This document shows positions 11,107 to 32,158 of a stretch of 64,000 nt of DNA, piece after piece. The notes beneath the pieces were generated by a model that made no database searches, was not told the origin of the DNA, and worked only from the letters and a program-made list of their open reading frames with translations. The stretch is from contig NC_079167.1 in the NCBI RefSeq assembly GCF_947568905.1, forward strand, positions 33,294,001 to 33,358,000. The letters run 5' to 3'. Positions within the stretch are counted from its first letter, which is position 1. The number at the start of each line of letters is the position of its first letter. This DNA is from Ostrea edulis. Lineage: Eukaryota. Both the position numbers and the translations under genes were made by a program.

Positions 11107-11173
11107 ATGGAATTGGCAAAATCAGTATTTGGTTCAAGAAATCCAGACGGATACAGCAGCAAAGCTGCAGCAG
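11107..11173 (+). CDS. SGSM3: SGSM3 coding exon 1
   Basis: gccATGg start; [22 protein letters not shown]; phase-1 donor G|GTGCGT is compatible with the next exon. Confidence 0.75.
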
Positions 11174-14114
11174 GTGCGTGTGTCTAGAGATTTTCTTTAA
11201 TGAGGATCTGAAGTTCGCAAAACATGGCGAACATATGCCACATAGGCAATGTTTGGGTATGCTGTGATTTATCGATAGGCTTAGACTAAAAGACTGCAAG
11301 ATGTGCACGCAGTAATCACAACGCAGAAGCACATTTTCTCCATGTCGGGCTCGGTTGTTTCATTACTTATGTGATAGATAATTGTACAACTGTTGTATGC
11401 CATATCACACGTTCAAAATGTTGAATAATTTCAGTTGAGACGTTGTCTGAGGATGAAGATGACTTTGTGGCTGGTCATGGGGAGAATATTGGTGTCTCTT
11501 CCACTCACTACCATACCACGTCAGACTTTGTTCCGACTCCCGGGGGTCCATTTTCAGCATTGACTCCATCAATGTGGCCAGAGGACATCCTCGCAAATTT
11601 AGGAAACCCAGTAGGTACCCCCCTCCCCCAAGGAAATGTTGGTGCATTTAGATCATCTATTATAGTTCCTTGCCAATGAACCATGCATGACACTTCTTTG
11701 TCATGAATGACATCTTATCACAATATGCTTGAAATTTACAATATGAATTCTCTTTTAATAGTATGTTGCAATCAGTATAAATCTAATTCTAAACCTGCTC
11801 TAGGTCTTACCATGACCAAACTTGCATGATAATTATATTTTGGGATTTCTTTATGTATGAAAATTGCAGTATAATATATTTATCTTTGTAGCTTGTACAT
11901 AGAGGGCATATATTAAGGTATCAGGAGAACTCGTACCCAGGAGAACTCGTACCCAGAAATTTGGGTATGAGTTCTCCAAGAGAAGTCGTACCCATCAATA
12001 TCTGGGTACGAGTTCTCCTGCAGAAAAACTTTGTCATTTTAATAAATAGAAATGTGGTTATGAGTTCTCCTAAAGAAAAACTTGTCAATTGTATCATAAA
12101 AATCTGGGTACGAGTTCTTTCAGGAGAACTCTTACCCAGCTTTTTGACAGAAATGACAAAGTTTTTTCTGCAGAACTCGTACCCAGATTTATCGGATAAA
12201 ATGACTATGTTTTTTTCTCAGGGAGAACTCATACCCAGAGTTTTATAATACAATTGACAAGTTTTTCTGCAGGAGAACTCGTACCCACTTTTCTATTTGA
12301 TAAAATGACAACTTGAAGTTTTTCTGCAGGAGAACTCGTACCCAGGTATTGATGGGTACGATTTCTCTTGGAGAACTCGTACCCAAATTTCTGGATACAA
12401 GTTCTCCAGAAGTCATATATGCATATATGTACTTAGAATCAATATGCATATTCTGCTTTAGAATTTTTAGATACGCCAAAGTTAAGTACCGTGTGAAATA
12501 TTCATGTACTTAATAAATGTAGTTGCTTTACAACTGCAAACCCTTCTTGAGCCTGGTGATGGTTCAAACCCAAGGTATTTAAAATAGGTAGTGACTGTAC
12601 CTTCATTAATTGCTTGATGTTAAAAGTGAAAGGCATGGGCCCTTTTGGAACTGAGGCTATTATGTGTCATGGTTGACATTGCCAAGTAAAGAAACCTCGC
12701 TGCTAAAGTACAGAGTTCCAAGTAGTCAAAATTTATGGGACTTCACCTACAATTGGTGATGTCTTTATACTAGTAAAATCTCATGAGTGGGATCTAAAAC
12801 AACAGACAATAAACAAACAGAACTTAATGTAGTCTTGATTGAAATGACTTTAATTCTTGTGTATATATTTGCAATAGGCAAACAGCTTTAACAGCATCTA
12901 AGGAGTATATTTAATGAAGAAGATTGAATTTTATTTTACTATGCATCTAATGAAAAGTATATCGATGACTTGCTAATAGAAAAATGACAGTCCCACACAA
13001 TGATTATGTTGTGATGAGTGTCGAACCCAGTGTGGTGTGTGTGTATATATATATATGTATATTCAGATGATTTGTACATTTAATGCTTATTAATTGCTTA
13101 TTAATTTCTATAGCCAGAAGACCCTAGTGGCCAGCTTGATTACAGATATGATGAGTTTGGATTTAAAGTGGAGGAAGAAGGTGTGTGTGTAGATAATGTT
13201 TTAGTACTCTAAATGTGACATCAGTGAATGTAGCTGAAGTACCATCACAAGCCATGGAATACTGCCTGTATACTTATTTTAGCAGGATTCATAGCCATGG
13301 AATACTGCCTGTATACTTATTTTAGCAGGATTCATAGCCATGGAATACTGCCTGTATACTTATTTTAGCAGGATTCATAGCCATGGAATACTGCCTGTGT
13401 ACTTATTTTAGCAGGATTCATATTCTAGTACCTTTGGCAGTGAAGCAAGAGTGCCAATTTATGGTCTTGTTAAACTTAAAAATCAATGTATCCAGTATTA
13501 AACACAGAATAATTGTTACATCATGTTAACACCAAATAGTACAACAGATCTGATTATTCGGAATTTTAAATCTGTTAAAATATGTACACAATTGCAAGGT
13601 TTATGTCCACAAATGTGGTGTGGCAAACAGAGAATGGACAACAATGGCTGCTGTGAAAGTCGTTAGCTCAGATTTTGCGACATTTATTTCAAAGTAATTT
13701 TTTTCACATATCTTGACATATAATTCTATAGAGCAATCTATCTAGCCCCGTAATCAGATATGTGACTGTTGTATTAATTTTTTTTTGTAGATGGCCCAGA
13801 GGAAAACTCAAGTAAGCTCTTAAGCACCCCATTTATTGAGGACCCTCAGCATCGGTTGAAATGGACAGCATATCTGGAGTTCACACACAACAATGAAGTG
13901 GGAGATCTGACATGGGACAAGGTGAAGGCTTATTATCTCCCTTGAAACAGATTTGTTGAGCGACACTTGTGTACAAGGTTTAAGCCACATTGTATAAAGA
14001 TCTTGGTTCCTTTTGGTTGTTTTAGGTCAAATGTAATGCATCAAGGTGTTTATCAAACTTTGAGAAATGGTACCTTGCTTTTCAAATCTAAAAGGTCAAA
14101 ACTACTGGATGAGA

Positions 14115-14152
<38 letters not shown>

Positions 14153-17100
14153 GATGTGCAAGACTGAAAGCCTTATCAATTTCACATTTTGGGGATGTTC
14201 CACACATTCTCACGATGTCAAGGTTTCGTGATTACATACAACACCTGTGTATGGAGGTAGGTATTCACAAAACCTTTGACATTGTGAAGATGTGTGTAAG
14301 ACAGCATCCCCCAAATGTGAAATTGAGGATGTCTTGCACAAGGTTATGATTTCTTGTTGGTTTTATAAAGTAAAAGGACAAGGTCACTGGAAAGCCTTTT
14401 GAAAATATGCTGAAAGCTTATTAAATCCCACTCTTTACATATTTTATACCTCATTAAGGAGTTACATTCTGGTTCTTTGATGATTCTTGAAGAAACAATG
14501 AACTTGATATTTCATGCATGATTACAAATGGTGGGTGTGAGATCCCCATGGATTGTCGAGGAAATTACTAAAAGGTTAAACTCACTGTTGTCAGTATTGG
14601 TTCTATAAAAGAAACAAAGAAATAATTTGATTTCACACAGTATTTTCCATATGTAGTATTTACAAACTTCTTATCATTTAAGTCGAAGGTAAATATATGC
14701 CCAATTCCATTATACATGTATTATACAATGAATTAAATCTATTTTCAAATCAATCTACCATAAAGCATGATATTCAGTACATTTGCAATTTTCTTTTAAT
14801 TGAGAATTAATATTGATAAGTCACATGAGGGTGGGGATACCTTAATTGTGAGTACAGAATTAAGGACACAGAATACCCCCAAAAATTGTTATAGAATTTT
14901 GTAAAACTGTTTATAAATGTTTTAATATTGATAAAACCACATTTACCACAAAATTTTCCTATCAAACCACCTTTATTTTTGAATCATTCACAAATCTTTA
15001 CTTGAAAATTTAAATTCAATGGAAAAGCATTACTCAAAAATTTAAATTCTTCAAAAATGTCTTTTTATTGGTGCATTTCATGTACATGTATTAATGACTG
15101 GTTTTAATACATAATTTTAAAAAAATCAAATATTAATAGAAAATTCCACATAAACACAGCAAAATTCTGTTTCATTTGATGCATCCAAAATCTTTGTTAG
15201 AATCTCAAGAATTTAGAAACATTTATAATTACAATAATTGTATGCCTCTGTGTAATGATTGATTGATTGTATCTTGCTGAACTTCTCTCTCAAGAATTTT
15301 TCACTCTTATGGAGACGTCTCTGTGTAATGAAATCTTTTCCTCTTGTGCAGGTTGAACCACGGCTTCCCAGATCGGAGAAGCTGAGAGCCATGGTGAAGC
15401 AGGGTATTCCCCACTCGCTACGGCCACACATTTGGATGAGGCTGTCGGGGGGAATGGAAAAGAAACTCAAGTCTGATGTCACATACAAAGACATCGTCAA
15501 AGCCAGCTCTAATGATCTACTTATGACATCAAAACAAATTGAGAAGGTAGCAGACATTAAAGAAATAAATTTTATTTTTGAAAACGTGAGGGAATGAACG
15601 ATGATGCTTCATGCTATTTGTTTAAATAGACTTCTATATTTATCGAGATTCATACATGCATCGTTTACAACTGCAGTGCATTCATGAGGAAATGTTTATT
15701 ATTACAATTTGTGAGGCGAAAATGTTGGAATTGTAAATTTCACATTGTAGTCATAATTTTGCACACTATCCACAATAATATTGTACAATGTACAGTTTCA
15801 TTGGTACATAGATTAAAAACTCGTGTTACTATCCACGATAATATTGTACATCAGTTTCATTGGTACAAAGATTAAAAGATCCTATTTTTCTGGTATAGAT
15901 TGATTTGTTTCTTACAGCCTTGTATCTGTTACAGGACTTACTGAGAACAATGCCAAGCAATGCCTGTTTCTGTAATATCCATGGGACTGGGGTCCCCAGA
16001 CTAAGACGGATACTGAGGGGCCTGGCCTGGCTGTACCCAGACATAGGTTACTGTCAGGGTACAGGAGTGGTAAGTCTTGTTACTGTCAGGGTACAGTAGT
16101 AGCAGGAAATAATCCACCGGAAATAGCATTTCATGTCGCTAAATCTTGTCCATTAAAAAAAAACATACATGTAACAGTTTGTAAATAGTATTGGCAAAAT
16201 TTTCTTTTACAGTTAATTTTTCAGATACATTGTCCTATGTTTGAGATTAAAACTTTTCGAAAAACCATATTACAAAGTATTATTTAATACATAAAAACCA
16301 TATTACAAAGTAAATTTTGCATTACTGTCATGACTTGATATTGTTAAAAAATGAGCTGAAAAGGAAAGTATGCATACATATGTGCAGTAGACCGGAACTA
16401 AATGTTTGATTTATTTGGAGTAGATAGCTAGCTCCCTTTTGCTGTTTATGGAGGAGGAGGACACGTTCTGGATGATGTGTGCCATTATCGAGGACCTGCT
16501 GCCGGCTTCTTACTACTCCAGTACTTTGATTGGGATACAGGCAAGAATCGGACCAAACAAATACAGTGGAACCTCATTATTTTGTTCCAATATAATATGC
16601 AGTGTAGCGTAATAAACAGGGAACATAAAAACGAGGTTCCACTGTACATTATTCAGTGAAAGTTTTTTTATATCCTCGTATGTGTTCTTAAAGCTTGTTT
16701 TGATGCTGATAGTCTTATTTACAGCAAATGAATTTTGGCAGAAAAAAAAGTGTAGCTTGAGTGTACACTTATGATAATAAATGTGTGTTGATATGAAACA
16801 CTGTTTTGTTTTCTACATACAGGCAGACCAGAGAGTGATGAGACACTTGATCATTAGCTACTTAACAGAAATAGACCTTGTTCTTAAGGAACATGACATT
16901 GGTATGTACAAAACATAAAATAGGAAAAGAGTAGTGTTATCTAAAACTTGGAAACGTCTACTGACAAATCATGCATCAGGTTGTAGTGCTCATCATGCTC
17001 AGCTCATGCATTCTATGTGGTTTGCTTTGTGTTGAAATGCATGGAGTAAATACTGACTAACTTGAGGAAACTAAAGTATCTGACAGATTATACATGTATG

Positions 17101-20100
17101 TAGCAATATTGGCTTTAAAAAGTCTTGAAAATGAAGATGAATAGATATTGATAAAATTAGCTGATAGTGTTAATTTCTGTGTTGTTGACATCTACACCTG
17201 GCATGTAGAGACCTTGGCCTGTGTTTACTAACAACCTGAGTCCTGTAGCATGCTGCATGTCTTTACAGAGCTGTCCCTAATCAGCCTGCACTGGTTCCTC
17301 ACACTCTTTGCCAGTGTCGTTCACATGAAGGTACTCCTCAGGATCTGGGATTTATTTTTCTATGAGGGCTCCACTGTTCTCTTCCAGATCACGATGGGCA
17401 TGCTCAAAATGAAGGTTTGTCACACTGTTTACACAAGTCTCATGTGAAATCAGGATTTATATGATTGTGTGTCTAATGAATGAGAGCCGTATTAGGTTTT
17501 GTTCAAGTCACTGCATGACAATGGGAGTTGTCCTCCTTAAAGTTAGGACAATGTTAATGATGATTAACAACTGAAAAATAAACTTATGGAATGCACCCAT
17601 GAACAAGTAATATTTTGCGACATCATTGTGTACATCCAGGAAGCATTTATCAATATAAAAATACCACACACCAGGAAATTTTCACCCTGTTTTATTTTCA
17701 ACCATACGCATTGGAAATTGATTTCTCTCAGATTTGAATTTGCCCGATGTTGTTTTTACTACTTAAAAGTAATGAAAGAATATATCCTTGCTCAGTTTTA
17801 AACTTTCCTATGAAGAATAAAGGATTTTCCCTGCATATACTATGCGATATTTAAATGAGGTTTCCTGGTTATATCGATATCAATAATTTTCTGCGGTTGG
17901 AAATTTTTGTGAGATTTGATCTTTAAATGGTAGCAAATTATATTCTACATATCCAATTTCTGCAATTGCATTATACCTACCGGAGTCTGTGTACCTATGA
18001 GCATGTATATATATTTTGCACTTGTAATTTTGCCGGTGTTTTTCCAATCTGCAAAAAATGGACAACCACAGAAAATACCTGTTATATGGTTTATGATTGG
18101 CAGAGATAACAATATGCAAAGTAAAGACTCTAAAGAGAGAGTAATTTATCAATCTCAAACATTCTCAACAAGGAAAATATGGTTTTTTTTATGTGTGATA
18201 TAAAGATTATTATATTTCATGTTTAAATGAAAAAAAAGTTTTCAATGTGATTTTATTATTGGTAGTAATTTGGTTTCCTCATTTTTTTTGTTGAAAACCA
18301 ACTTGAGTTGTTTTTGTGGTTCTGTCAGAGCACGAATTCAGTACATTTATTGCTCTGATGTAAAGGAAGATGATGGAGTATATTGCGGGGAAATTAACAC
18401 ATCAATGATAGGATTTATAAAAATTTTTCTATTCATATAATTGATGATTCCACAATATAAGACAATGTGCATATGTTTCATAGGAGGATGAGTTGCGTAC
18501 TCTGGATAACTCGGCACAAATTTTTAACTCCCTTTCTGATGTACCTGGGGATGTTCAAGATGTGGAGGATCTCATAGAGGTAAACAGCACTGAAGGATTT
18601 GTCATTTGAACCTCATTTGAAAAGGCATGCAAATTGTTGACATTGGAAAAGGTGTTTGTTCATTGTTTATTTTATCGTGAATTGTTGACAGGTGTCTTGT
18701 GTTTTAGATTTCCTATCGAGTGGCTGGGTCACTCACAGACATGGTTATAGAATCTCAAAGAAGGAAACATTTGGCTTATCTAATGGCTGATCAAGGAGCA
18801 ATAGTCAATCCCGATTCAGCAAAGAACCTGCCAAAACAAGTGGGTAATTTCTTCTTTTTTTTTATATGGAGTACTGAAATAAATTGCATGTAAATTTAAT
18901 TAAGTGTATAAATCATGATAACTTAGTTTTGAAGTAAATTTTATGAGGTTATGGATTTGCTAAATTAGGTTTCTTGTGAATGGTTTTGTATAAATTTGTG
19001 GTGATGAACAAATTTAATGTTGGCAAAAATGATATCTTGCTGATAAAATTGGACAAGACAGTATTAAGGAAATAAAGTTGCATGAATTTTAAGTAATTCA
19101 AAGTATGCAATAAAGTAAAATGCTTACATACAGCAATTCTATGTTTTGTCCTTCATCTTTTTAGTTCCCTACTGGCAAACCGGAGGGGACTTTAGGTTTG
19201 CACTCTGTCTCTCCATCTGTCAGTCTCACCATCTGTCTGCAAGTCTGTGACAAATCAGTTTTCTAAATTTTTTTCAACATGCATGCAGATATTCATTTGG
19301 TATATTGCTTTAACATGACAAGTTACAGATCAAGTTCAAATTTTGTTCTTTTCCATTGATTTCCTGCAGAGTTATGTCCCTTGAACTTAGCATAAACTGT
19401 TGATTCATGATTTTTCACGCAGAATATTACTCAGACGACTTGACATGGGGCCGGTAGGGGACATTTATTGCTATGCAGTACTTACAAAATGCTTGTTTTT
19501 AACAGCAATTAAACAAAAGACATTTGAAGAGGTCTCGTTCCCTGGTCTCAACATTACTGTGGGGTGAAGTCGAAGAAGATGATTTTGGGAAAGCTAAAAA
19601 CATTCGCCAAACTGAAATTCTGGTTGACTTGCGGGAAGCAATACTGAAAATAGCTCGTCACTTCCAGTCATTGGATCCAAAGAACAACAAAGTGGTAAAC
19701 AAAATTTCAAAGTTCTGCATGGATATGTGATAGGGTCTTATTATCTTTTTAATGGTCAAGATATTTGGAATTTTAAATTTAAAGAATGTTACCCAATTTA
19801 GAATAAGCTTGGAAATGAGTAACAGTCCAGTAGTGACATTTTGATGTAGTGATTGAGAAGAGGTAATTAGTATTTCTTATCTTTTTCCAGTAGAAATATT
19901 ATGACTGTTGTCAGTTTTCTTGTCATATCAAAATTTTTCACAGGAGTGATTGATGCATTTACATGTATTTTCCAAATCATACTGTATACCAGAAATGTAG
20001 ATTTACGTGAGAAACGCTTTTCCTTTCATAGGAATGGGTCTAGAATATAAAAATTTCACAAAGAAAATATTTTCCCAATTCTAATAGTGCTATCTTTTCC

Positions 20101-23100
20101 CATTCCTAAAACACTGAAGTAAACAAGCACTGAAGTATAAGGAATCTTTTGATCAGATATTGACAGCAGATTATGCAATGGAAAGTCATGCCAAAGATCT
20201 GGAGAATTATGTGAACGTAGCAAGGAACAAACGACGTCGGGCCAAGGCTCTCCTGGACTTTGAACGTCATGACGACGATGAACTGGGCTTCAGGAAGAAT
20301 GACATTATCACTGTATGTATTCATTACTGGACATAACTTCATCTACATTGTATGTAAAAAAAAAAATTCAAACTTTCACACTGCCCAAGATGATTTCAAT
20401 TTTTTTCTAGATTGTATATGTTATTGAACAGATATTTATGTATCCATATCAAAGATGCAGGTGCCCTGTAGTTCTGTCTGTGTGTCTGTATGTCAACACT
20501 TGTTTGTAACATGTGTTATATAATCTATAGACTTTGTATCCAGTATGTAAGTATACAATGGTCAGAGGGGAAAATATGTAAATTTTTAGGTCAGAAGGTC
20601 AAAATTCAAGGTCATAAGATAATGACTTTCAGTATTATATATTAACTTTTATGATATTCATGTTCATACAAAGGTAGAGGGAGGTGAAAGAAGGATGTTC
20701 AATAATTTTGGAGTATTAGGTCAAAGGTCAGAATAGTGCTGGTTTAATGAGCTTACTGCAGGTTTTGAATTATTTGTCACTTTGATTGTTTCGTTAGTGT
20801 AACTGTGGAGCATTAAAGTTTTTTGAATCTGTTGTATAATCTTTCTCTACAGATCATATCTCAGAAAGATGAGCACTGTTGGGTTGGGGAGTTGAATGGT
20901 TTGAGGGGCTGGTTTCCTGCGAAGTTTGTGGAGTTACTGGATGAGAGGAGTAAGCACTACAGCTCAGCTGGGGACGACAGTGTCACAGAGACCATCACAG
21001 ACCTCGTCAGGGGGACGTAAGTCTGATACAGATTTAATGTCACTGTCACAGACCTCGTCAGGGGAACGTAAGTCTGATACAGATTTAATGTCACTGTCAC
21101 AGACCTCGTCAGGGGGACGTAAGTCTGATACAGATTTAATGTCACTGTCACAGAGACTGTCACAGACCTCGTCAGGGGAACGTAAGTCTGATACAGATTT
21201 AATGTCACTGTCACAGACCTCGTCAGGGGGACGTAAGTCTGATACAGATTTAATGTCACTGTCACAGAGACTGTCACAGACCTCGTCAGGGGAACGTAAG
21301 TCTGATACAGATTTAATGTCACTGTCACAGACCTCGTCAGGGGGACGTAAGTCTGATACAGATTTAATATCACTGTCATGGAGACCATCAAAGATGTGGT
21401 CAGGGAAATGTGAGGCTAGATATTGAGATTAAATGTCCTTAATAGGTATAGATAGTGTTTGATTGAATGATAATTTAAAAGAGAAAATGAGATGCTATAA
21501 ATAAAGCAGATAGGGGAAAATAGTCATATTCAATGTTTCAATGGTATGTACATTGTATCTTTTACTCATTATGGAAACTTTGTGTTTCAGACTCTGTCCA
21601 GCATTAAAAGCAGTGTTTGAGCACGGATTGAAGCGGTCATCAATTTTAGGGTCTGCCTGTCATCCTTGGTTGTTTTTTGAGGAGGTGGGTGGTTTATTAT
21701 TGCAGTTTTGGATGAACTGCTATAAATATGAGAATTAAGATATTATATGTGAAAGGAAATACGATGTAAGTAATTGTGATTTGGTATGTAGTGATTTTTA
21801 TTCACAGGCGGCCACCAAAGAAGTAGAGAAGGACTTCCAGTCGGTGTATTCCAGGCTGGTGTTATGCAAGACATACAGGTAATTAAGACATTTATTAATG
21901 ACTGAAATGTACAAAACTGATTTAATATTGAATATACCAGCTTCAAGGAAATTGTTGGGGGGATGTCTGTAGTTTCCATGCTATTATTCAAATATGTTTT
22001 GGCTTCGGGTGATGATACATCATGCCTGTAGTTAACTGAAAGATGATTTCTTTTGAAGGCGGGGGGGGGGGGGGGGGGGGGGGGGGGGTCATTAAGTCAA
22101 AGGTCAGGGTCAAATTGGAGCATTTTTCAAAATTGAATCCCATTAGAGCAGTTCTTTAATAGTAATAACAGGACAATTTAAAAATGTGGCACACATTTTA
22201 TAAGGGAGGAAACTCTGAGGTCACACGTTTACAATCTTTGTTTTACTATGAATGACTATTTTACTATAAAATATGTTCAAACCAACATTTTTGTAGACTT
22301 GATGAAGATGGCAAAGTACTTACACCAGAGGAGATACTATACAGGGTATGTATAGGTCTTCCCCCGATCATAAAACTTTATCAAGTACTAATACTAGAGG
22401 AGATCTATACGGGGTATGTGTTTAATGTCATAGAAGTTACAGGAAACTGGCGGCTGTAATACTACTACTGCTGTGTAAATTGTGTAATCAACACCAAATG
22501 ATATCTCCATGGTTTATCTAATGTATAGATTGTGTTTTGATTGACATGTAGATAAACATTATTTGTTGATTGTAGGCGGTCCACGCTGTCAATGTATCAC
22601 ATGATGCCTGCCACGCCCAGATGGATGTCAAGTTTCGATCACTTATTTGTTGTGGCCTTAAGTAAGCCTGATATTTCACTTTCTTATGATACTGTCCCAT
22701 GGAGATCCCGGTTAGAATAGGTTCTCAGTACCCCTTCCTTGTTGTGAGAGGCGACTGAATGGGGTGGTCTTTCGGATGAGACCGTAAAAACCGAGGCCCC
22801 ATGTCACAGCAGGTGTGGCATGATAAAGATCACCTACTGTGACACGGGACCTTGGTTTTGCTGTCTCATCCAAAAGATCGCCCCATTTAGTCGCCTCTTA
22901 CAACAAGCAAGGGGTATGGAGGACCTACTCTAACCCGAATCCCCATGGGTTTCCATTATAAAACTTTTGAGATGATTAAAGGGGAGATGTATCATACCTC
23001 AAAAGTAGGTCATGATTAATGATGAACAATAGATTTTTGAAATGATTGATTGACATAATTGGTTCACTGTTGTTTGGATTTGTGAGGTGGATAATGTTTA

Positions 23101-26100
23101 CTTAAGATGTACATGGGTTGCTGCTATCTGTTTGTGTTGTACAGGGCAATGGATTTTAACTTGGAGATACACTCTGCGTAAATACTGTATCAAATCTTGT
23201 ACATCCCTCTGTCAATGATCCAAGTGTATGGTAAAGTTTGATAAAGTATATGTATTTCTCTTGGTACCTCATCCTCTGGGGATACAGGTTAGAACAAGTC
23301 CTCAGTACCCCTTGCTTGTCGTAAGAGGCGACTAGATGGGGCAGTCCTTCGGATGAGACCGCAAAAATTAAGATCCCATGTCACAGCAGGTGTGGCATGA
23401 TAAAAATTCCTCCCTGCTCAAAGGCCGTAAGTGCTGAGCATAGGCCCAAATTTTTCAGCCCTTTACCAGCAATGGTCACCATATGTGTGAAAAATTCTCG
23501 ACCAGGACGTTACACAATATAAAACCATTCAACTTTGTTACCTCTACCAATTCATTTTTGATTAGTTTTATCATTGGTCATGATAACCTTGTTTTAGGAT
23601 CACATGTTGTGTAGTACAGGTATGAATTTCACTAGAAAGTCATTTGTAAGCATCAAAATGAGATTGATACTTAATAAAATGTGAGAGAGCAATTGTTACC
23701 CCTTTGGAGTTTTATGTAATTGCAAGTAGTCTTATATGCTATAACACATTGTTATTGTGTATATTCATTAAGTGAGTAACGAGTATCTTCTGCAGATAAA
23801 AATTTTGCAATTCGATCCTTAATAGGAAACAAATTATTTTCTGCATTTCCAATTTTTCTGGTTGCATTATACCTATATATATACCTATATGTGTCTATAT
23901 ATATACATGTGTAGAAACACGACTGAAGAAGACCGGTAACACGGTCGAAATATTTCGACTAAGTGTTTAGAGTTTTTATATATATATATAAATATAAATA
24001 ATATATACTGTATTGCGATTTTAATTTTCGGTATTGCGATTTTAATTTTCTGTAAAAACGGACTGTACTGTTTTACTATTTGTACATTTTTACTATTTGT
24101 ATTGTTTTTCACAGTGAGCAGGTTCTACACTTATGGCTGGAGACACTATGTTCCTGTATGGACATTGTAGAGAAATGGTATCACCCCTGGTCGTTCATGC
24201 GCAGTCCCGGATGGGTACAGATCAAATGTGAACTGAGGTAAGTACAATTTTAAGTACAGTTATAGTTACAATCATATACAGCTATAATGTAAAGGTGTTG
24301 TCGGTACTCGTTGTTTAACATAGATTTTAATGCATGCTATTTGAAATTTAGTGCACCCTTGCTGTTGTGGGAACACCTTTGTATAAAATATATTTTGATT
24401 TGCATCTACCTTCTTCATAGACATATATCCTTTGTGAAAGTTTTGTGTGTAATAATAATACTGTATAGCAGGAAATTAAATCGCAGAGTTAATTTTCGAT
24501 ATATTTGCTGAAACAAAATTTCCGCGAATTTAACATTCAGTGAATTAATCTTTCCTATTGAAGGATATTAAGATTTGTTTTTCCGCGAATTAAACCAACC
24601 ACGATTTGTTGCTAAATGAAAAAATCACGATTTTTTCTGACCGCGATATTAACCTGCTATACAGTATGCTGAGAAAAAGAAAAATCACTGTTGTTAACCA
24701 GAGTTCTAAAGCATATGATATAGCTGAAATGCAGCATCTAAAGCCTACACTAAGCAGATAGATAAATCATATGCAGCTTCGATATTCAATAAATAGAATG
24801 ATATGATTACAGTAACATTGATATTTACTTCCAAATCAAGGGAAAAACTCGTAAGGAAGCAAATCTAGCCATCCTTTACTGTATTCAAGAACATAGACCT
24901 TTAAGAAATAAATTTCATTTTTGAACTGCAACACTTCACTCTGGCATGCGACACATTAATGCTTCATGAAAAGCATGCCAGCGTTAAGTTTTGGAGTTCA
25001 TGTGTACTTCATGTATTTTCAGAAATGAAATAAATTTCTTATTTTTACATTTCTACTTTGAAATTCATTTCTGTTGGAATTTCCGGCCGTTTGAATAGAC
25101 ATACAATATTCATTAAGATTCATACGCTCATTGTTCACAACTGCAGGGCATTCATGAGGAAATGTTTATCATTACAATTTGTAATGATATCAAAGGCAGA
25201 AACATTGGAAATGTAAATATTTAAGAATGAACAGATTATGAATACTGTAAAGAGTTAGGAAACAGTGAAACATCAGAGGGTGTCTCGTGTAACCCTCACT
25301 TCTGACTTCGTGGCTGCCTGCTGATGATGAGTTGATATATTGTGGTTTATTACAGGCTTTTGGCTCAGTTTGCCTTTAATCTGTCCATGGATTGGGAATT
25401 ACAAGTCAGCAAAAAGAAATCTCCGACTTTCTCAATCACAAAATCTGTCCAAGACATTCTCATCAAGCACCACCTCTTCAGTTGGGAAATATGATTCAAA
25501 ATGAAATTATTTTACACATGATTGAATGTGCAATAGAATTTCCACACCAGTCAAGTACACATGTACATTTACATTGTACAAATATTTTTTTAGAATTTGT
25601 ATTGATGCTCACCAAGAAACCTTTGAAGATCATGAGATGAAAATTGTCTTGTATTTTTTGTTTCCCATGTTAAGGAATTGGGAGTTTTGCCTGACTTAAT
25701 ATATAGGCACTTCTATGAAAATCAGTCACACAATTTATCTGTATTTTACAAATTGCAGCAAATCCCAAACATTCCAGCAATATTGAGTATGCTTATGATT
25801 GAACATGAGCAGCTGAAAATATCATACCATAGTTACGCAATCAGTCAAAATACATCTCATACATGTGCTTTGGGGGTTTCCTATAGGAATTTTCTGTTGA
25901 GCTTTGTCATGCAGTAGATGTTTTTGTTCTAGTTACCTGCATGTTCTGTGGTGGTGGATTTCATATCAATATTAAAATGGAAGTCTTTCTATTGAAACAT
26001 TTTGTTAAAAGCTGTAGTAGCACTTATTCTGATGAGAAATAATTTTTGAAAAATGAAGAGCTAATTTTAGATTTGTAAAGCAATTCCTGATGCTTTGTTA

Positions 26101-29100
26101 ATTTCAACAGAGTCTTGTCTCAGTTGGCTTTCAACTTGTCTCCGGAATGGGAAATACCTAAACGAGGAACTCCACAAAAAGCACAGGTCAAAAATGGCGT
26201 ACGAGATATGCTTATTAAGCATCACCTGTTTAGTTGGGAGATATGAGTAAAACACATGTCAGATGTAGATAATGGTGAAGGCCCACTCTGATATGATATG
26301 ATATCAAGACAACACTTCATATATGTATGTCATTAGAGTGTTAAGTTAGATGTATAGATTCTCTTAACAGCAAAATACAAAACAGGGGTACAACTTCCTT
26401 GTTGGATAGCTCAGAAAGTTTACAACCTGGGAAATGTTTGCAATGTTGTCAGTGGTACATACAGGGCATATATTGCCCTTGCCATAGGCATCGTCTCGAG
26501 TTTTATCATTGGATTCCCATTGTCCGTTAAAGGTTTTACTGGTAACCCCATAACTTAAATTGCATCAGTATTTGTAATTCGTACCAGTATCAACTGTATT
26601 AGGGGTGTTTGTCATCGGCAGTCACTGGCTACCTGTAGTAACAACCGTGCATTTTCAGAAAGGAAATCCAATTAATGTGATGGCAGTTCCTCTTAACATG
26701 AAAAATGTTGTCATACTACAACTAGAAAATGATTTTTCATTATCCTTAAATTACAGGTAGATAATTAAATATTTTAAATTTTCCAATCCTTTTTGAATTA
26801 AAAAAAACAATTCTCTCCTAAAAGTGTTATCTATGGATGTCTAAATTTTAACGCAGATAAAGTTCCAGACGGTTGAATAGGTCACACATGTGGAAGACTA
26901 CGGTCAGTCACCTTTATACTGAGAATAATTACTGAGTAGTAAAAGCCCATATTGATGATTGTACAAGGCTGCAATTGGCATGTAAGATAGGGGACCCATA
27001 GAAACACCAGGTCAATGACATTAGTGCTAAAGATATACCAGTGGTTCGTTAAATCACTGATTGGTACCATCAGCAGCTGCCTAATTCAAATTAGATGATA
27101 GATCTACCCACACACTCCTTACACTGACCTTGTGTAGTGAAATGAGGGAACGGATCAAAAGATCTAACTTTAATCGGCAAAATAGTTGAACAAGTATCAC
27201 TGTTGGTTTAAGTCAAGGTCACAAAGTTACTATTCGCTAGTAGTAAACAAGCCAAGCTCTTTCCAATAACATACATGTACATGTATAAATTTTCCTGCAG
27301 CAAGATTTGATGATATAGTGTGTGTGTTGATCTATAAATGAATTCTCCTCTCCTAATGACAAAGGTCATGTGTCAGGTTAGTGTAAGAATTAATTAAAGT
27401 ATGAAAATATGGGGGTGGGGGTGGGGTGGGGGGACACATAGATATCAAAATTTTTATTGGGGAATATTGTGGTGTGCTAAAGTAATAAATTATTTATTCA
27501 AAACATGACTGCATGCATGCTAAGCAGCTGTGTTTACCTTTGGTGTGCAATGGTGTGATCAGTGCATTTGTATAATCACACGTGGATATAGGTATCAGAT
27601 TATCTAAAAGTGACTCCACAGATATTTTGATAAAATTCAGAATAGATCTTGACAGTTTCTTTATGGTTAATTCCCGTCTCATTTTGATGCTTATAAAATA
27701 CTTCAGTGCTACTGTGTAAATTAGGATGTATATACTATTTGTTGATGTTGAAGACAGCCTAATTTTTTCAGTGTATGAAAATAAATAAAATGATGACCGA
27801 GGCTAGGATTTCATAAAAAATATAAAAGTATCGAATTCTGATCTTGTAGGTGTCATATTAAAGATCTTTTTAAGGACTATTATTCAGGATTCACCCCCAT
27901 CAAAAGGTCTCTCTGAATCTAATGTTTCCCATCACCAGGGTCATCTTCGGTGAAATTTTAGCCAAATTCACCCATCATTATTATCTAGTACTCGGGCCAC
28001 AAAATACCTGAATAAAAAAAGGTAGCCCCAGGTAATAACTAAACTTGCATATACATGTATAGACATTAAAGAGTGGCATGCAAATTTGAATGAAGGCAAG
28101 CTCAGGTGTACAAGACCAATGTCACACCTGTGTGATTTTCAGACTTCAAATCAAACTGAAAGTGAAACTTGATAGATGAAATTTTTGTAACCTCACTGAG
28201 CTATCAAATTCTCATTGGATACCCAGACTGCTATGTGTAATATCAGGATCATTCCTTCACTAGTTCTCAGTCTCTCAATATGTGTACTAACATTTCATGC
28301 TGCCTGTAGATGGAACATTTTATAATACAACAAATCTTTTTTTGTTTATTGATGTTAGGCACTTTGGGTTATTTCATATTAAAGTAATTTGATAATATCC
28401 AGTTTTTGTTACCTTTACTGCAAAGAATTGAAATCCATCTGTATAAATGTTCAATATAGTATTGTGATACTCTTTTGTTTTTGTTAGTTTTCTCAGGATG
28501 TTGTAATGAAATCCATTCTTTTTATGTTGTAACACCTATTTGTTGTGTTCTGAATTGAACTTATTATTTGAAATTTTATTTATATGAATAAAAAAGGCTC
28601 CCTATGTTTTATACTCTATTATACACACTGTTGACAACTGTTAATAAATACATTGCAATAATACATTTACTTTTTGTTTTAACTCTGTTTATTTGTACTC
28701 TTAATTTAAAGTATGAATACTGTAAACCAGCTTCTATTCACAGCTACTTTATTTCGCGATTCACCTGTGGTAAACTGGTTTGCGACAAGTGTTTTTCACG
28801 ATCGAGCCTTTTTCATTACAGATGACAGACATTCATGTACTGGACGGCAATGAGAAATATTCATGACAATTAGGTTCTCGCTAATGTCGCGAAATTTTCT
28901 CACACGCAAATAAAAGTTGGTTTTCAGTATACAACATGATATAGGTTAGTCCGAAATATACGTTTTCCAGACTTTTTTATGATTTTGATATTTACTGTGC
29001 CAGGAAAACGTCAGATCCGGCGCCATTACGTAAACTGGAAATTTGCCACCTCCAGCTGGAGGCGGCATTCTCGGGCCGATTTTAAATACTTGCGAGCCGA

Positions 29101-29783
29101 ATTTAATGTTAAACTCATAATTTTTCAATAAAACGATGCTTCCTGTTCTTACTAATATCTATTAAAAGAGTGATATCTTCTCCAAAATTCGATAACAGAA
29201 GCACGCAATTTGTAGTCAACCGAATTTGAGCGAACGAGTCACGTGACTCAAAACAGCTCGACAGTTTGTTAAAATGTTTTCTTGAGGCTGTTTATGTGCT
29301 TAAAGTACCCATAAAATCGATATTAGCAAGTACAGGAAGCATCGTTTTATTGATTAATTATGAGTTTAACATTAAATTCGGCTCGCAAGTATTTAAAATC
29401 GGCCCCAGAATGCCGCATCCAGCTGGAGGCGGTGAATTTCCAGTTTACGTAATGGCGCCGGTTCTGACGTTTTCCTGGCACGGTAAATATCAAAATCATA
29501 AAAAAGCCAGGAAAACGTCAGATATTTTGGACTAGATATAGGTATTTATAAAGAAAGTGAATTTGCAGTACAAATATTTATACTTTATGGCACTTGGAGG
29601 CGTGTATGTATAAATATAATTTTCTTCACCTGATCTGTTCATTTCAGACTTTTATCCCAGTTTTCATTCAAGCTTTCAAGGGATTGGGAAATCCCACATC
29701 AGACAAAAACTTCCTACCAGCCATTGAAGGAAGGCGTGAAAGATATGTTGGTTAAACATCATCTGTTTAGCTGGGACCTGTAA
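11107..29783 (+). CDS. SGSM3: Small G protein signaling modulator 3 (RUN and TBC1 domain-containing protein 3): TBC-SH3-RUN, 19 shared coding exons plus 3 alternative last exons, 802-803 aa
   Basis: Exons: 11107-11173, 11435-11610, 13114-13180, 13791-13921, 15352-15546, 15935-16069, 16424-16540, 16823-16901, 17269-17414, 18484-18579, 18708-18839, 19506-19694, 20157-20312, 20853-21016, 21591-21684, 21808-21878, 22297-22345, 22576-22661, 24115-24237, then 25356-25494 or 26111-26246 or 29648-29783. All phases are compatible; 2273 nt shared plus 136 or 139 nt. Hallmarks: [90 protein letters not shown]. Confidence 0.96.
11435..11610 (+). CDS. SGSM3: SGSM3 exon 2
   Basis: tttcag|TT GAG...; [21 protein letters not shown]; donor CCA|GTAGGT. 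Confidence 0.9.
11927..12413. mobile_element. Foldback MITE built from gagaactcgtaccca sub-repeats (SGSM3 intron 2)
   Basis: About 95 bp at the left end is the reverse complement of the right end; a related partial copy lies at 59690-60100. Confidence 0.75.
13114..13180 (+). CDS. SGSM3: SGSM3 exon 3
   Basis: [22 protein letters not shown]; tag| acceptor, G|GTGTGT donor. Confidence 0.9.
13250..13421. repeat. 43-bp tandem repeat x4 (intron 3)
   Basis: Unit agccatggaatactgcctgtatacttattttagcaggattcat. Confidence 0.92.
13791..13921 (+). CDS. SGSM3: SGSM3 exon 4
   Basis: [44 protein letters not shown]. Confidence 0.95.
14176..14326. other. Imperfect ~150-bp inverted repeat (hairpin) in intron 4
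   Basis: Left arm tcaatttcacattttggggatg...gatgtcaaggtttcgtga pairs with right arm tcacaaaacctttgacattg...catcccccaaatgtgaaattga; arms ~60 bp, loop ~30 nt. Confidence 0.75.
15352..15546 (+). CDS. SGSM3: SGSM3 exon 5 (TBC domain start)
   Basis: [33 protein letters not shown]...KQIEK. Confidence 0.96.
15935..16069 (+). CDS. SGSM3: SGSM3 exon 6 (TBC catalytic motifs)
   Basis: [12 protein letters not shown]...[12 protein letters not shown]; carries the arginine and glutamine fingers. Confidence 0.96.
16424..16540 (+). CDS. SGSM3: SGSM3 exon 7 (followed by a GC-AG intron)
   Basis: [39 protein letters not shown]; donor CAG|GCAAGA. Confidence 0.92.
16823..16901 (+). CDS. SGSM3: SGSM3 exon 8
   Basis: [26 protein letters not shown]. 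Confidence 0.94.
17269..17414 (+). CDS. SGSM3: SGSM3 exon 9
   Basis: [49 protein letters not shown]. Confidence 0.96.
18484..18579 (+). CDS. SGSM3: SGSM3 exon 10
   Basis: [32 protein letters not shown]. Confidence 0.93.
18708..18839 (+). CDS. SGSM3: SGSM3 exon 11
   Basis: [30 protein letters not shown]...NLPKQ. Confidence 0.93.
19160..19499 (+). mobile_element. Helentron-associated non-autonomous element (HINE-like) abutting the exon 12 acceptor
   Basis: Starts and ends in T-runs. Left sub-terminal hairpin gttccctactgg..ccggaggggac, then tctg/tcca microsatellite-like stretch; right sub-TIR ccggtaggggac followed by a short terminal segment ending gcttgttttt. Confidence 0.65.
19506..19694 (+). 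CDS. SGSM3: SGSM3 exon 12
   Basis: [12 protein letters not shown]...[35 protein letters not shown]. Confidence 0.95.
20157..20312 (+). CDS. SGSM3: SGSM3 exon 13 (SH3 N-half)
   Basis: [11 protein letters not shown]...[26 protein letters not shown]. Confidence 0.96.
20853..21016 (+). CDS. SGSM3: SGSM3 exon 14 (SH3 C-half)
   Basis: [34 protein letters not shown]...TITDLVRG(T). Confidence 0.96.
20996..21378 (+). repeat. 51/63-bp minisatellite made from the exon 14 end and its 5' splice site, 7 copies
   Basis: Unit cacagacctcgtcagggg(g/a)acGTAAGTctgatacagatttaatgtcactgt; GTAAGT at 21017, 21068, 21119, 21182, 21233, 21296, 21347. Confidence 0.95.
21591..21684 (+). CDS. SGSM3: SGSM3 exon 15 (RUN domain start)
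   Basis: [31 protein letters not shown]. Confidence 0.96.
21808..21878 (+). CDS. SGSM3: SGSM3 exon 16
   Basis: [23 protein letters not shown](R). Confidence 0.95.
22061..22088. repeat. Poly-G tract (28 nt) in intron 16
   Basis: Direct reading. Confidence 0.9.
22297..22345 (+). CDS. SGSM3: SGSM3 exon 17
   Basis: [16 protein letters not shown]. Confidence 0.95.
22576..22661 (+). CDS. SGSM3: SGSM3 exon 18
   Basis: [28 protein letters not shown](N). Confidence 0.95.
22696..22949. mobile_element. Fold-back (self-inverted) SINE copy in intron 18
   Basis: Forward 5' half of the SINE family seen at 62112-62375, followed directly by the same segment in reverse orientation. Confidence 0.8.
23272..23530 (+). 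mobile_element. SINE-like repeat (same family as 43596-43860 and 62112-62375)
   Basis: Shared gttagaa..gtcctcagtaccccttgcttgtcgtaagaggcgacta..ttcggatgagaccgc..tgtcacagcaggtgtggca core. Confidence 0.85.
23915..23968 (+). ncRNA. Minimal type I hammerhead-ribozyme-like motif (PLE-terminus type) between TA tracts
   Basis: cga-CTGAAGA-a-gaccg(gtaaca)cggtc-GAAA-ta-TT-tcg: core motifs, 5-bp stem II, palindromic AATATT stem III, stem I cga/tcg extended by aaacac/gtgttt. There is one extra A after CUGANGA. Activity untested. Confidence 0.5.
24115..24237 (+). CDS. SGSM3: SGSM3 exon 19 (last shared exon)
   Basis: [40 protein letters not shown]; phase-2 donor AG|GTAAGT. Confidence 0.96.
24461..24664. 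mobile_element. 204-bp MITE
   Basis: TIR CTGTATAGCAGG...CCTGCTATACAG with TA on both sides. Confidence 0.8.
25356..25494 (+). CDS. SGSM3: SGSM3 alternative terminal exon 20a
   Basis: ttattacag|G; (R)[45 protein letters not shown]; ATTAAA at 25971. Confidence 0.85.
26111..26246 (+). CDS. SGSM3: SGSM3 alternative terminal exon 20b
   Basis: tttcaacag|A; (R)[44 protein letters not shown]; AATAAA at 28587 and 28643. Confidence 0.9.
28718..28929. mobile_element. ~210-bp MITE-like element
   Basis: Imperfect TIRs tactgtaaaccagctt / aagttggttttcagta. Confidence 0.55.
28947..29534. mobile_element. 588-bp foldback DNA transposon derivative with 9-bp TSD (AcademH-like, or MULE-like)
   Basis: Termini TAGTCC...GGACTA; ~210-bp inverted arms (the mirrored ORFs 28946-29128 and 29266-29535 reflect them); perfect TSD GATATAGGT at 28938-28946 and 29535-29543. 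Confidence 0.88.
29648..29783 (+). CDS. SGSM3: SGSM3 alternative terminal exon 20c (closest to the vertebrate C-terminus as I recall it)
   Basis: catttcag|A; (R)[44 protein letters not shown]; AATAAA at 31280. Confidence 0.92.
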
Positions 29784-30119
29784 TCTGTTAAATTGGGATT
29801 TAATATATCAGATGAAATGGGATAATTTTTATCAGTTGAATATTGAAATACATGTATATCATTTGAATCTATTATATCAGTTGAATTGGGATAAATTACA
29901 TGTTCTGTAAAACGGCAAAAATTTGTGGTGGTTTGATTTCTGCTAATTTTACAACAAGCAGTTAGTTGTGAACATCAGCTCTCATGGAAATATTTGCATT
30001 AAAGCTTTTGAGTTCCTATTGTCATTAGCTTTACGAAATTGAACTCAAGTGACCAGATTTAAGGTTAGAATTTATGAGCTTTACTCCTTTGCATGTTTTT
30101 CTTGTATTACTAACAGTAC

Positions 30120-30415
30120 ATCAGCTGATTTCAGATCTATTGTATCATTTATACTTGGATCTATCATACCAGCTGAATTGGGATCTATTATATCAGCTGA
30201 ATTGGGATCTATCACATCAACTGAATTGGGATCTATTATATCAGTTGAATTGGGATCTACAATGTATTTCATCAGTGGAATTTGGATCTATTATATCAGC
30301 TGAATTTGGATCTATTATATCAGCTGAATTGGGATCTATTATATCAGCTGAATTGGGATCTATTATATCAGTGGAATTGGGATCTATTATATCAGCTGAA
30401 TTGGAATCTATTTTA
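30120..30415. repeat. 24-bp minisatellite (~11 copies) in the putative 3'UTR of exon 20c
   Basis: Unit atcagctgaattgggatctattat. Confidence 0.88.
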
Positions 30416-31395: not shown

Positions 31396-32108
31396 TTTTT
31401 AGGTCACCTGAATCATTCAGGTGACCTATTGCTATCTGTTTTTGTCCGTCGTCGTTCGTCGTGCATTAACATTTGAACATTTTCAGCTTCTTCTCTGAAA
31501 CACCTGAACCAATTTCAACCAATTTTGGCATATAGCATCAGTGGGTGGAGGGGAACAAAAATTGTGAAATTTGTGGTCCCTGCCCCCCTGGGGCCTGAGG
31601 GGTGGGGCAAAAACCATCAAAATGAGTGTAATTTTAAAAAATCTTCTTCTTTACTCCTGGACATCAAGAAGCCAAACTGTGGGCATAATTATAATGAGCG
31701 TTGAGCCCTCTACCAAAATTGTGAAATTCATGGCCCCTGGGGCAGGGGTTCTTGTGTTAGGGTGGGGCTCTATTGGTCATATAGTAAAAATGTAGAAATT
31801 CTTTGAAAATCTTCTTCTCTGTCTCTGGGTATTAAGTAGACAAACTAATAGCATGGTAATGATGAGCAAGGATGCCTCTTTAAAAATTGTGAAATTCATA
31901 GCCCCTGGATCAGGGGTTCTGGTGTGTTAGGGTGGGGCTCTATTGGTCATATAGTGAAAATGTAGAAATTCTTTGAAAATCTTCTTCTCTGTCTCTGGGT
32001 ATTAAGTAGACAAACTAATAGCATGGTAATGATGAGCAAGGATGCCTCTTTAAAAATTGTGAAATTCATGGCCCCTGGATCAGGAGTTCTGGTGCTAGGG
32101 TGGGGCTC

Positions 32109-32158
<50 letters not shown>

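What the first reader, a model, noticed from the sequence alone, without database searches (positions are those of the whole stretch)
25356..29783. SGSM3 has three tandem, mutually exclusive paralogous last exons
Seen in the sequence: after the phase-2 donor of exon 19 (24238) there are three separate phase-2 acceptors, each opening an intact 44-45 aa frame that ends in the same motif. 20a: [45 protein letters not shown]. 20b: [44 protein letters not shown]. 20c: [44 protein letters not shown]. Each has a candidate poly(A) signal downstream (25971; 28587/28643; 31280). The nucleotide sequences and the central ~12 residues are strongly diverged, while the end of the RUN domain, the W, and KHHLFSW[DE][IL] are kept, and the flanking DNA is not similar. 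Established knowledge: human SGSM3 ends in a single such exon (..[23 protein letters not shown], recalled). Inference: an old exon triplication kept by selection. It would give a switchable cassette that changes the RUN-domain end and tail (small-GTPase or partner specificity) together with three different 3'UTRs. I know of no description of this for SGSM3.
Basis: partly seen in the sequence, partly recalled or inferred. Interest (0 to 1): 0.85.

Follow-up and report, generated by a model that had tools for sequence, protein, structure and literature searches.

The report
Three alternative SGSM3 C-terminal exons
The flat oyster's SGSM3 gene really ends in three old, selected copies of its last coding exon that give three alternative protein tails, but public gene annotation already lists the three isoforms and many other molluscs have the same arrangement.

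Summary
After exon 19 (ends 24237) there are exactly three phase-2 acceptors (25356, 26111, 29648). Each opens a 44-45 aa paralogous unit that ends in KHHLFSW[DE][IL] and a stop. The window is Ostrea edulis chromosome OX387707.1. RefSeq already lists the three tails as SGSM3 isoforms X1 (20a), X3 (20b) and X2 (20c).

All three units are under purifying selection. Between paralogues, synonymous sites are saturated and pN is about 0.3. Against Crassostrea gigas orthologues, dN/dS is 0.12, 0.14 and 0.03.

C. gigas RNA assemblies show all three junctions from exon 19. The same a-b-c order occurs in the gastropod Haliotis. Three tail types are annotated across bivalves and gastropods, so the triplication predates their split. 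Similar arrays exist in an annelid, and multiple tail isoforms are annotated in a brachiopod, nemerteans and crinoids.

The units therefore behave as nested alternative 3' splice sites, not as three separate last exons with their own 3' ends.

The kind is known (KRAS 4A/4B-like duplicated terminal coding exons). I found no paper on it for SGSM3. Interest is modest.

The parts
11107..24237 (+). SGSM3 coding exons 1-19 (ATG at 11107; TBC, SH3 and most of the RUN domain). Exon 19 is 24115-24237 and ends with the first two bases (AG) of a split Arg codon.
   Evidence: RefSeq protein XP_056018405.1 (P0403) maps at 100% in 20 coding exons. Pfam RabGAP-TBC, SH3 and RUN hit the exon translations, and exon 19 matches RUN profile positions 76-117 of 131.
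25356..25494 (+). Unit 20a: acceptor ...ttattacag|G, 45 codons, stop TGA. Tail of isoform X1 (a-type, ...[16 protein letters not shown]).
   Evidence: Orthologue in C. gigas has dN/dS 0.12. The exon 19->20a junction is seen in many C. gigas RNA contigs.
26111..26249 (+). Unit 20b: acceptor ...tttcaacag|A, 44 codons, stop TGA. Tail of isoform X3 (b-type, ...[16 protein letters not shown]).
   Evidence: dN/dS is 0.14. The exon 19->20b junction is seen in C. gigas RNA contig L005.
26247..26280 (+). About 30 nt starting at the 20b stop codon, conserved between O. edulis and C. gigas, with a 5'-splice-site-like GTAAAA. Possible regulatory element.
   Evidence: Neighbouring non-coding DNA is only about 60% alike in forced global alignments. 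Its function is inferred, not shown.
29648..29786 (+). Unit 20c: acceptor ...catttcag|A, 44 codons, stop TAA. Tail of isoform X2 (c-type, ...[20 protein letters not shown]). This is the copy closest to the single tail of other phyla.
   Evidence: dN/dS is 0.03. The exon 19->20c junction is seen in C. gigas RNA contig L006.
29787..31300 (+). Presumed distal 3'UTR, up to AATAAA at 31280. It includes a 24-nt minisatellite at about 30070-30460.
   Evidence: Hexamers; repeat. The 3' end in O. edulis is not verified. It is placed by analogy with the distal poly(A) site seen in C. gigas.

Best explanation
The 3' end of the Ostrea edulis SGSM3 gene is an array of three paralogous terminal coding units, a, b and c. 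Each unit has its own 3' splice site and about 45 codons followed by a stop. The codons encode the last element of the RUN domain, a variable linker and the conserved C-terminal stretch ..D[IM]L.KHHLFSW...

The single donor of exon 19 is joined to one of the three acceptors. The first unit included sets the protein's C-terminus. Anything downstream, including the later units, is untranslated. One gene therefore makes three SGSM3 proteins with the same TBC, SH3 and RUN body but different RUN ends and tails.

Shown: all three units exist, are intact and are under purifying selection; all three junctions are used in the related oyster C. gigas; the a-b-c array predates the bivalve-gastropod split.

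Inferred:
- The choice in O. edulis is likewise made at the acceptor, with a shared distal poly(A) site.
- The first-transcribed acceptor (a) is the default, and upstream acceptors must be repressed for b or c to be used.
- The tails change the partner or small-GTPase preference of the RUN domain.
For: Sequence:
- Three intact phase-compatible units, and no others in the window.
- Each acceptor has a CTGAT branch-point-like motif and a pyrimidine-rich tract upstream.

Annotation:
- The window is 100% identical to O. edulis OX387707.1.
- The tails equal RefSeq isoforms X1, X3 and X2.
- X1 maps at 100% in 20 exons.

Selection:
- Between paralogues pS is 0.78-0.96 (saturated) and pN is 0.28-0.31.
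- O. edulis vs C. gigas dN/dS is 0.12 (a), 0.14 (b) and 0.03 (c), against 0.02 for exon 19. Fisher p is at most 4e-5 for each.
- Flanking DNA is only about 60% alike in forced alignments.

Transcripts:
- C. gigas intron-free RNA contigs join exon 19 to a (L009-L014), to b (L005) and to c (L006).
- The exact a-type protein is indexed in 76 blocks of the collection (two of them genome assemblies), the b-type on 1 contig and the c-type on 2.
- L009 and L010 run unspliced from the a acceptor through b and c. L009 ends in AATAAA plus a poly(A) tail.

Depth:
- Three tail types are annotated in oysters, scallops, mussels, Mya, Mercenaria, Haliotis, Patella, caenogastropods and Biomphalaria.
- The Haliotis locus has the order a-b-c.
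- Molluscan a-type tails fall on one side of a branch with 93/91 support.
- The annelid Ridgeia has three intact units, with the canonical one last.
Against: - No O. edulis transcript was available. Exact look-ups of X2 and X3 found nothing, and X1 was found only in the genome record. Usage in this species therefore rests on RefSeq models and on C. gigas.
- The long a-type contigs come from de Bruijn graph assemblies. In principle these could thread pre-mRNA reads, although every upstream intron is removed in them and one ends in a poly(A) tail.
- Shorter a- and b-type contigs stop at about L007:20000-20290 without a tail. An internal poly(A) site is neither shown nor excluded.
- Contig counts are a crude proxy for isoform abundance.
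- The protein-level consequence is untested. The structure model was unusable (pLDDT 43.6).
- The tree has 44 columns and does not resolve b from c or place the non-molluscan copies.
Confidence: 0.85

Rival explanations
1. True alternative last exons. Each unit is a separate terminal exon with its own cleavage and polyadenylation site, so the choice is a competition between splicing and polyadenylation and gives three unrelated 3'UTRs.
For: Poly(A) hexamers lie after each unit in O. edulis: ATTAAA 25971, several after 20b, AATAAA 31280. Several C. gigas a- and b-type contigs end at about L007:20000-20290, between b and c. A conserved 5'-splice-site-like block follows the 20b stop. Such elements are known to aid use of internal terminal exons, for example calcitonin/CGRP exon 4 (my own knowledge).
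Against: Every C. gigas a-type contig reads past the ATTAAA that follows 20a. L009 and L010 continue through b and c, and L009 reaches the distal AATAAA with a poly(A) tail. No contig that stops between b and c carries a poly(A) tail, and no canonical hexamer lies near L007:20290.
Confidence: 0.25
2. Only one unit matters. 20c is the ancestral-type tail. 20a and 20b would be decaying duplicates that annotation pipelines and assemblers pick up as splicing noise.
For: 20c is by far the most conserved unit (dN/dS 0.03) and is closest to the single tail of arthropods and deuterostomes. Some lineages show damaged models: the Dreissena X1 tail is frame-shifted and the Haliotis rubra X3 tail is truncated. 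Only one tail type was seen in the octopus proteins listed.
Against: 20a and 20b are intact in every oyster examined, with dN/dS 0.12-0.14 while synonymous sites are near saturation. Orthologous a- and b-type tails persist across bivalves and gastropods in the same order. In C. gigas the a-type is the form most often assembled, indexed in 76 blocks against 1-2 contigs for the others.
Confidence: 0.04
3. Recurrent, lineage-specific duplications rather than one ancient triplication. Molluscs, annelids, brachiopods, nemerteans and crinoids would each have multiplied the exon independently, and possibly bivalves and gastropods did too.
For: The crinoid pair differs only in the last 23 residues and looks recent. 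The tree does not join annelid, brachiopod or nemertean extra copies to molluscan a or b. Short tails under similar constraint can converge.
Against: Within molluscs, a-type tails of bivalves and gastropods sit together (93/91). The order a-b-c and the spacing pattern (a and b close, c further away) are shared by Ostrea, Crassostrea and Haliotis. Chained ab initio models give the same order in caenogastropods.
Confidence: 0.35

Closest known systems
KRAS exons 4A/4B (PMC9882654)
   Same: Two homologous, tandem last coding exons give alternative C-termini on an unchanged catalytic body. As I recall, the upstream unit carries its own stop and the downstream one then lies in the 3'UTR. The arrangement is old and conserved.
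   Different: KRAS has two units and SGSM3 has three. As I recall, 4A is a spliced internal exon followed by 4B. In the oyster transcripts seen here, the downstream units are retained unspliced after the upstream acceptor is used. KRAS 4A is thought to have come from NRAS by exon shuffling (PMC9882654), whereas here the copies look like local tandem duplications. The affected part is a membrane-targeting tail in KRAS and the end of a RUN domain here.
CDC42 alternative terminal exons 6 and 7 (my own knowledge, not checked here)
   Same: Paralogous alternative last coding exons change the C-terminal end of a small-GTPase-pathway protein in a tissue-dependent way.
   Different: Two units, each regarded as a terminal exon with its own 3'UTR. 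They change lipid-modification motifs, not a folded domain's end.
Tandem mutually exclusive exon clusters (Kondrashov and Koonin 2001; Letunic et al. 2002; both cited in PMC9882654)
   Same: They originate by tandem exon duplication, keep the same phase and length, put only one copy into the protein, and are anciently conserved.
   Different: Classical clusters are internal exons flanked by donors and acceptors, and exclusivity is enforced at the RNA level. Here the units are terminal and have no donor. Exclusivity comes from the stop codon of the first unit included.
Single-tailed SGSM3 (RUTBC3) of arthropods, cephalochordates, hemichordates and vertebrates
   Same: Same TBC-SH3-RUN architecture, and a c-like tail ...[19 protein letters not shown]..
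   Different: Only one tail type was seen among the proteins retrieved for these groups. Length variants in Branchiostoma lie inside the linker.

Membership tests
SGSM3 / RUTBC3 orthologue | RabGAP-TBC, then SH3, then a C-terminal RUN domain | tested here: met
   Pfam hits on the exon translations, in that order along the gene. The precomputed Pfam domains of the matching proteins agree.
SGSM3 / RUTBC3 orthologue | Identity to an annotated SGSM3 protein | tested here: met
   XP_056018405.1 (O. edulis SGSM3 homolog isoform X1) maps at 100% in 20 exons. The window is 100% identical to OX387707.1.
Tandemly duplicated, alternatively used homologous exons | Adjacent exons are homologous and share phase and near-equal length | tested here: met
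   49-52% amino-acid identity to 20c, 18 invariant columns, all phase 2, 44-45 codons.
Tandemly duplicated, alternatively used homologous exons | Each copy is joined to the common upstream exon in real transcripts | tested here: met
   Shown for the C. gigas orthologues (L005, L006, L009-L014 mapped on L007). For O. edulis only RefSeq models are available.
Tandemly duplicated, alternatively used homologous exons | Only one copy is present in any mature mRNA (mutual exclusivity at RNA level) | tested here: not met
   C. gigas a-type contigs L009 and L010 contain the b and c units in their 3'UTR. Exclusivity holds only for the translated product.
Tandemly duplicated, alternatively used homologous exons | All copies are under purifying selection and conserved across species | tested here: met
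   dN/dS is 0.03-0.14. The three types occur across bivalves and gastropods.
Alternative last exons with separate poly(A) sites | Each terminal exon ends at its own cleavage and polyadenylation site | tested here: inconclusive
   In C. gigas the long a-type and the c-type share the distal site, and no tailed contig ends between units. There are no 3'-end data for O. edulis; only hexamers are seen.
Nested alternative 3' splice sites in one composite terminal exon | One donor, several acceptors, a common downstream sequence and a common 3' end | tested here: met
   C. gigas L007: donor at 18607, acceptors at 18900, 19680 and 20723. L006 ends just before, and L009 at, the distal AATAAA at 23111. 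Applied to O. edulis by inference.

The most novel reading that the evidence does not exclude
A three-way C-terminal switch of the SGSM3 RUN domain is an ancient feature, perhaps more than 500 million years old. It is shared at least by bivalves and gastropods and possibly by all Lophotrochozoa, since an annelid has three units and a brachiopod and nemerteans have several tail isoforms. The a, b and c tails would give the Rab-GAP different small-GTPase or partner specificities or different localisation, chosen by regulated acceptor use. This has not been described in the literature I could search.
Probability: 0.4. Interest if true: 0.5.

Novelty: new member of a known kind. Interest (0 to 1): 0.3.

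Why it matters
SGSM3 links Rab and Rap signalling through a TBC GAP domain and a RUN domain. Swapping the last RUN element and the conserved C-terminal stretch, while keeping the rest of the protein, is a natural experiment on what that end of the domain does. Three tails have been kept apart since before bivalves and gastropods diverged. Similar arrays arose or persist in annelids, brachiopods, nemerteans and crinoids. This argues that the tails are functionally distinct, and it gives ready-made variants for binding and localisation assays.

For genome annotation, the chained ab initio models in Pomacea, Batillaria, Mya, Paralvinella, Ridgeia and Lamellibrachia show that such arrays are easily mis-joined into one false protein.

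It is not a new principle. Duplicated alternative terminal coding exons are known, and RefSeq already lists these isoforms.

Tried and rejected
1. Exact look-ups of the O. edulis X2 and X3 proteins to find O. edulis RNA contigs returned nothing. X1 was found only in the genome record. There is therefore no same-species transcript evidence.

2. The short metagenome and Logan contigs carrying P0001 and P0050 (L001-L003) were too short to show the array. L001 served only as a related-oyster copy of 20c.

3. The Lingula and Lineus loci could not be fetched. Lingula had no record and the Lineus gene range was too long. Brachiopod and nemertean exon order is therefore untested.

4. An AlphaFold2 model of the RUN region built from a 60-sequence alignment was unusable (mean pLDDT 43.6), so no fold search was run. 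I did not try a second model. It would have needed a much larger typed list of references for uncertain gain.

5. A sequence search of the PDB found only the RUSC2 and NESCA RUN domains (6if2, 4giw). The NESCA match ends in the stretch aligned with the first ~14 residues of exon 20, and no solved structure covers the KHHLFSW end.

6. I first read the gap in the C. gigas 3'UTR alignment (L007 21072-22262) as a 3'UTR intron. I rejected that reading. The gap has no GT-AG, it has 14-nt terminal inverted repeats and a TA duplication, and it is absent from the C. angulata assembly.

7. I looked for intronic pairing elements of the docking/selector type. Only chance-level short inverted repeats and one MITE turned up.

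8. Paper searches for SGSM3 with alternative last exon, RUN domain plus alternative splicing, or Crassostrea found nothing relevant.

9. An earlier-findings search for similar cases in this genome returned nothing.

Full report
**What is in the sequence**

Exon 19 of a plus-strand gene ends at 24237 (GAACTGAG|gtaagt), leaving AG as the first two bases of a codon. Three AG acceptors follow, with the exons starting at 25356, 26111 and 29648. Each completes an Arg codon and opens a frame of 45, 44 and 44 codons. The stops lie at 25492-25494, 26247-26249 and 29784-29786.

They share 18 invariant columns:
- an N-terminal block (L.Q..F.LS..WE);
- a variable middle;
- a C-terminal block (V.D.L.KHHLFSW).

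At the DNA level the copies are 57-62% identical, and the similarity stops at the exon edges. The motif K[HQ]H[LIVM][FY][ST]W occurs nowhere else in the six frames of the window.

**What gene it is**

Translations of the upstream exons hit Pfam RabGAP-TBC, SH3 and RUN, in that order. Exon 19 covers RUN profile positions 76-117 of 131. The alternative units therefore supply the last RUN element plus a tail.

The window is 100% identical to Ostrea edulis chromosome OX387707.1; locus L004 equals window 1107-39783. RefSeq protein XP_056018405.1 (SGSM3 homolog isoform X1) maps at 100% in 20 coding exons from an ATG at 11107. The three tails match RefSeq isoforms exactly:

| Unit | Isoform | Accession |
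|---|---|---|
| 20a | X1 | XP_056018405.1 |
| 20b | X3 | XP_056018408.1 |
| 20c | X2 | XP_056018407.1 |

The three-tail structure is thus already in the public annotation of this very gene.

**Selection**

Between the paralogues, the proportion of synonymous differences is 0.78-0.96, which is saturated. The non-synonymous proportion is 0.28-0.31, or about 0.2 in the two conserved blocks. The duplication is therefore old, and no copy has drifted freely.

Between O. edulis and Crassostrea (Magallana) gigas orthologues the values are:

| Exon | dN/dS |
|---|---|
| 20a | 0.12 |
| 20b | 0.14 |
| 20c | 0.03 |
| exon 19 (constitutive) | 0.02 |

The excess of synonymous change is significant for each unit, with Fisher p at most 4e-5. 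Flanking non-coding DNA is only about 60% alike in forced alignments.

**Use in transcripts**

No O. edulis RNA contig could be retrieved. For C. gigas, the public-run assemblies hold intron-free contigs that encode the complete protein with each tail:
- a-type: indexed in 76 blocks of the collection, two of them genome assemblies and the rest RNA contigs of 2-10 kb (L009-L014 fetched);
- b-type: one contig (L005);
- c-type: two contigs (L006 fetched).

Mapped on the C. gigas genome (L007), exon 19 (18484-18607) is joined to 18900 (a), 19680 (b) or 20723 (c).

**How the choice is made**

The long a-type contigs L009 and L010 continue unspliced from the a acceptor through the b and c units. L009 ends in AATAAA (L007:23111) followed by a poly(A) tail. 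The c-type contig ends at the same place.

The one gap in these alignments (L007 21072-22262) is not an intron. It has 14-nt terminal inverted repeats and a TA duplication, and it is missing from the C. angulata assembly. It is a transposon insertion polymorphism.

The array therefore behaves as one composite terminal region with three nested 3' splice sites. The first unit included ends translation at its own stop, and the later units become 3'UTR. Exclusivity is at the protein level, not the RNA level.

Shorter a- and b-type contigs stop between b and c without a tail, so an internal cleavage site is neither shown nor excluded.

In O. edulis each acceptor has a CTGAT branch-point-like motif and a pyrimidine-rich tract. 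The donor of exon 19 is close to consensus. The a acceptor is transcribed first, and the a-type is the form most often assembled in C. gigas. I therefore infer that a is the default and that b and c require the upstream acceptors to be held back. This step is inference.

A block of about 30 nt starting at the 20b stop is conserved between the two oysters and contains a 5'-splice-site-like GTAAAA. It is a candidate regulatory element. The contigs seen read through it.

**How old it is**

A profile of the three tails found 128 cluster representatives, many of them stray genomic reading frames of SGSM3 last exons from many invertebrates.

Among annotated proteins, different paralogous tails follow the identical ...VQIKCELR in the following groups:
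- oysters, scallops, mussels, Mya, Mercenaria and Dreissena;
- Haliotis, Patella, Littorina, Babylonia, Pomacea, Biomphalaria and other gastropods.

Most of these have three types that match a (..DIL..HHLFSW), b (..GVRDMLI.HHLFSW) and c (..P[LF][16 protein letters not shown]).

In the Haliotis asinina locus the units lie in the order a (67003), b (68245), c (71550) after exon 19. This is the same order and spacing pattern as in the oysters. Ab initio models that wrongly chain the copies give the same order in caenogastropods and Mya.

In a tree of 83 tails, the molluscan a-type sequences lie on one side of a branch with 93/91 support. Types b and c are not resolved from the single-copy tails of other phyla, as expected for 44 columns. 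I conclude that the triplication predates the bivalve-gastropod split.

Outside molluscs:
- The annelid Ridgeia has three intact units, with the canonical one last.
- Paralvinella and Lamellibrachia models chain two units.
- Lingula has three tail isoforms and Lineus has two.
- Crinoids have two that differ only in the last 23 residues.

Whether these share an origin with the molluscan array is open.

Arthropods, a priapulid, a hemichordate, amphioxus and the vertebrates retrieved showed only one tail type.

**What it probably does**

The first ~14 residues of each unit align with the end of the solved NESCA RUN domain (4giw). No solved structure covers the KHHLFSW end. My structure model was too poor to use.

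RUN domains bind small GTPases. From my own knowledge, SGSM3 has been reported to bind Rap and Rab proteins and merlin through this region. The likely effect is therefore a change in partner preference or localisation of an otherwise unchanged Rab GAP. This is inference only.

**Comparison and verdict**

The kind is known. Tandemly duplicated terminal coding exons that give alternative C-termini occur in KRAS (4A/4B, PMC9882654) and, from my own knowledge, in CDC42.

This case differs in three ways:
- it has three units;
- the units act as nested acceptors rather than spliced cassettes;
- it alters the end of a folded domain.

I found no paper on it, but RefSeq already models the isoforms. The novelty is modest.

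Noticed in passing
window 28960-29518 (insertion roughly 28718-29545): MITE-like element with 204-nt inverted arms (93% complementary) and a 151-nt loop, in the interval between 20b and 20c. The related-oyster contigs L001 and L002 align up to 28717 and resume at 29546, so the element looks like a recent insertion in O. edulis.
   Followed up: partly
window 30070-30460, with diverged copies from 29783: 24-nt minisatellite (about ATCAGCTGAATTGGGATCTATTAT) in the presumed 3'UTR right after 20c. Diverged copies start at the stop codon. The related-oyster contig L001 also carries copies.
   Followed up: no
window 26247-26280 and L007 19815-19850: About 30 nt starting at the 20b stop codon are nearly identical between O. 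edulis and C. gigas, although the surrounding non-coding DNA is not. The block contains a 5'-splice-site-like GTAAAA.
   Followed up: partly
L007 21072-22262 (C. gigas GCA_963853765.1): 1.19-kb element with 14-nt terminal inverted repeats (CCGTATATACTCGC) and a TA duplication, inside the SGSM3 3'UTR. It is absent from C. gigas RNA contigs and from the C. angulata assembly L008, so it is an insertion polymorphism.
   Followed up: yes
L016 about 34006-34300 (Ridgeia piscesae): A 42-nt tandem repeat reiterates the last 13 codons plus stop ([13 protein letters not shown]) of the distal SGSM3 unit six more times, directly after the real exon end.
   Followed up: no
proteins P0256, P0262, P0456, P0143, P0134, P0221: Ab initio gene models in Pomacea, Batillaria, Mya, Paralvinella, Ridgeia and Lamellibrachia chain two or three of the alternative units into one false C-terminus. 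The Dreissena X1 (P0308) tail is frame-shifted and the Haliotis rubra X3 (P0307) tail is truncated.
   Followed up: partly
window 31477-32710: Two or more tandem copies about 85% alike of an element whose reading frames repeat KIVKFMAPG.GVLVLGWG..., downstream of SGSM3 (self-match of L004 30532-31600).
   Followed up: no
window 1107-2608 (-) and 7120-8097 (-): The upstream neighbour on the minus strand is a PLAT plus ankyrin-repeat gene. Between it and SGSM3 lies a 325-aa open frame with weak endonuclease/reverse-transcriptase-associated (Exo_endo_phos) hits, probably a LINE fragment (gene table of L004).
   Followed up: no
proteins P0037, P0051, P0075-P0081 and similar: Vertebrate genomic reading-frame fragments are homologous only from about ..[24 protein letters not shown] onward. 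This suggests that vertebrates split this tail with an extra intron, so the vertebrate last coding exon may be shorter than the molluscan unit.
   Followed up: no
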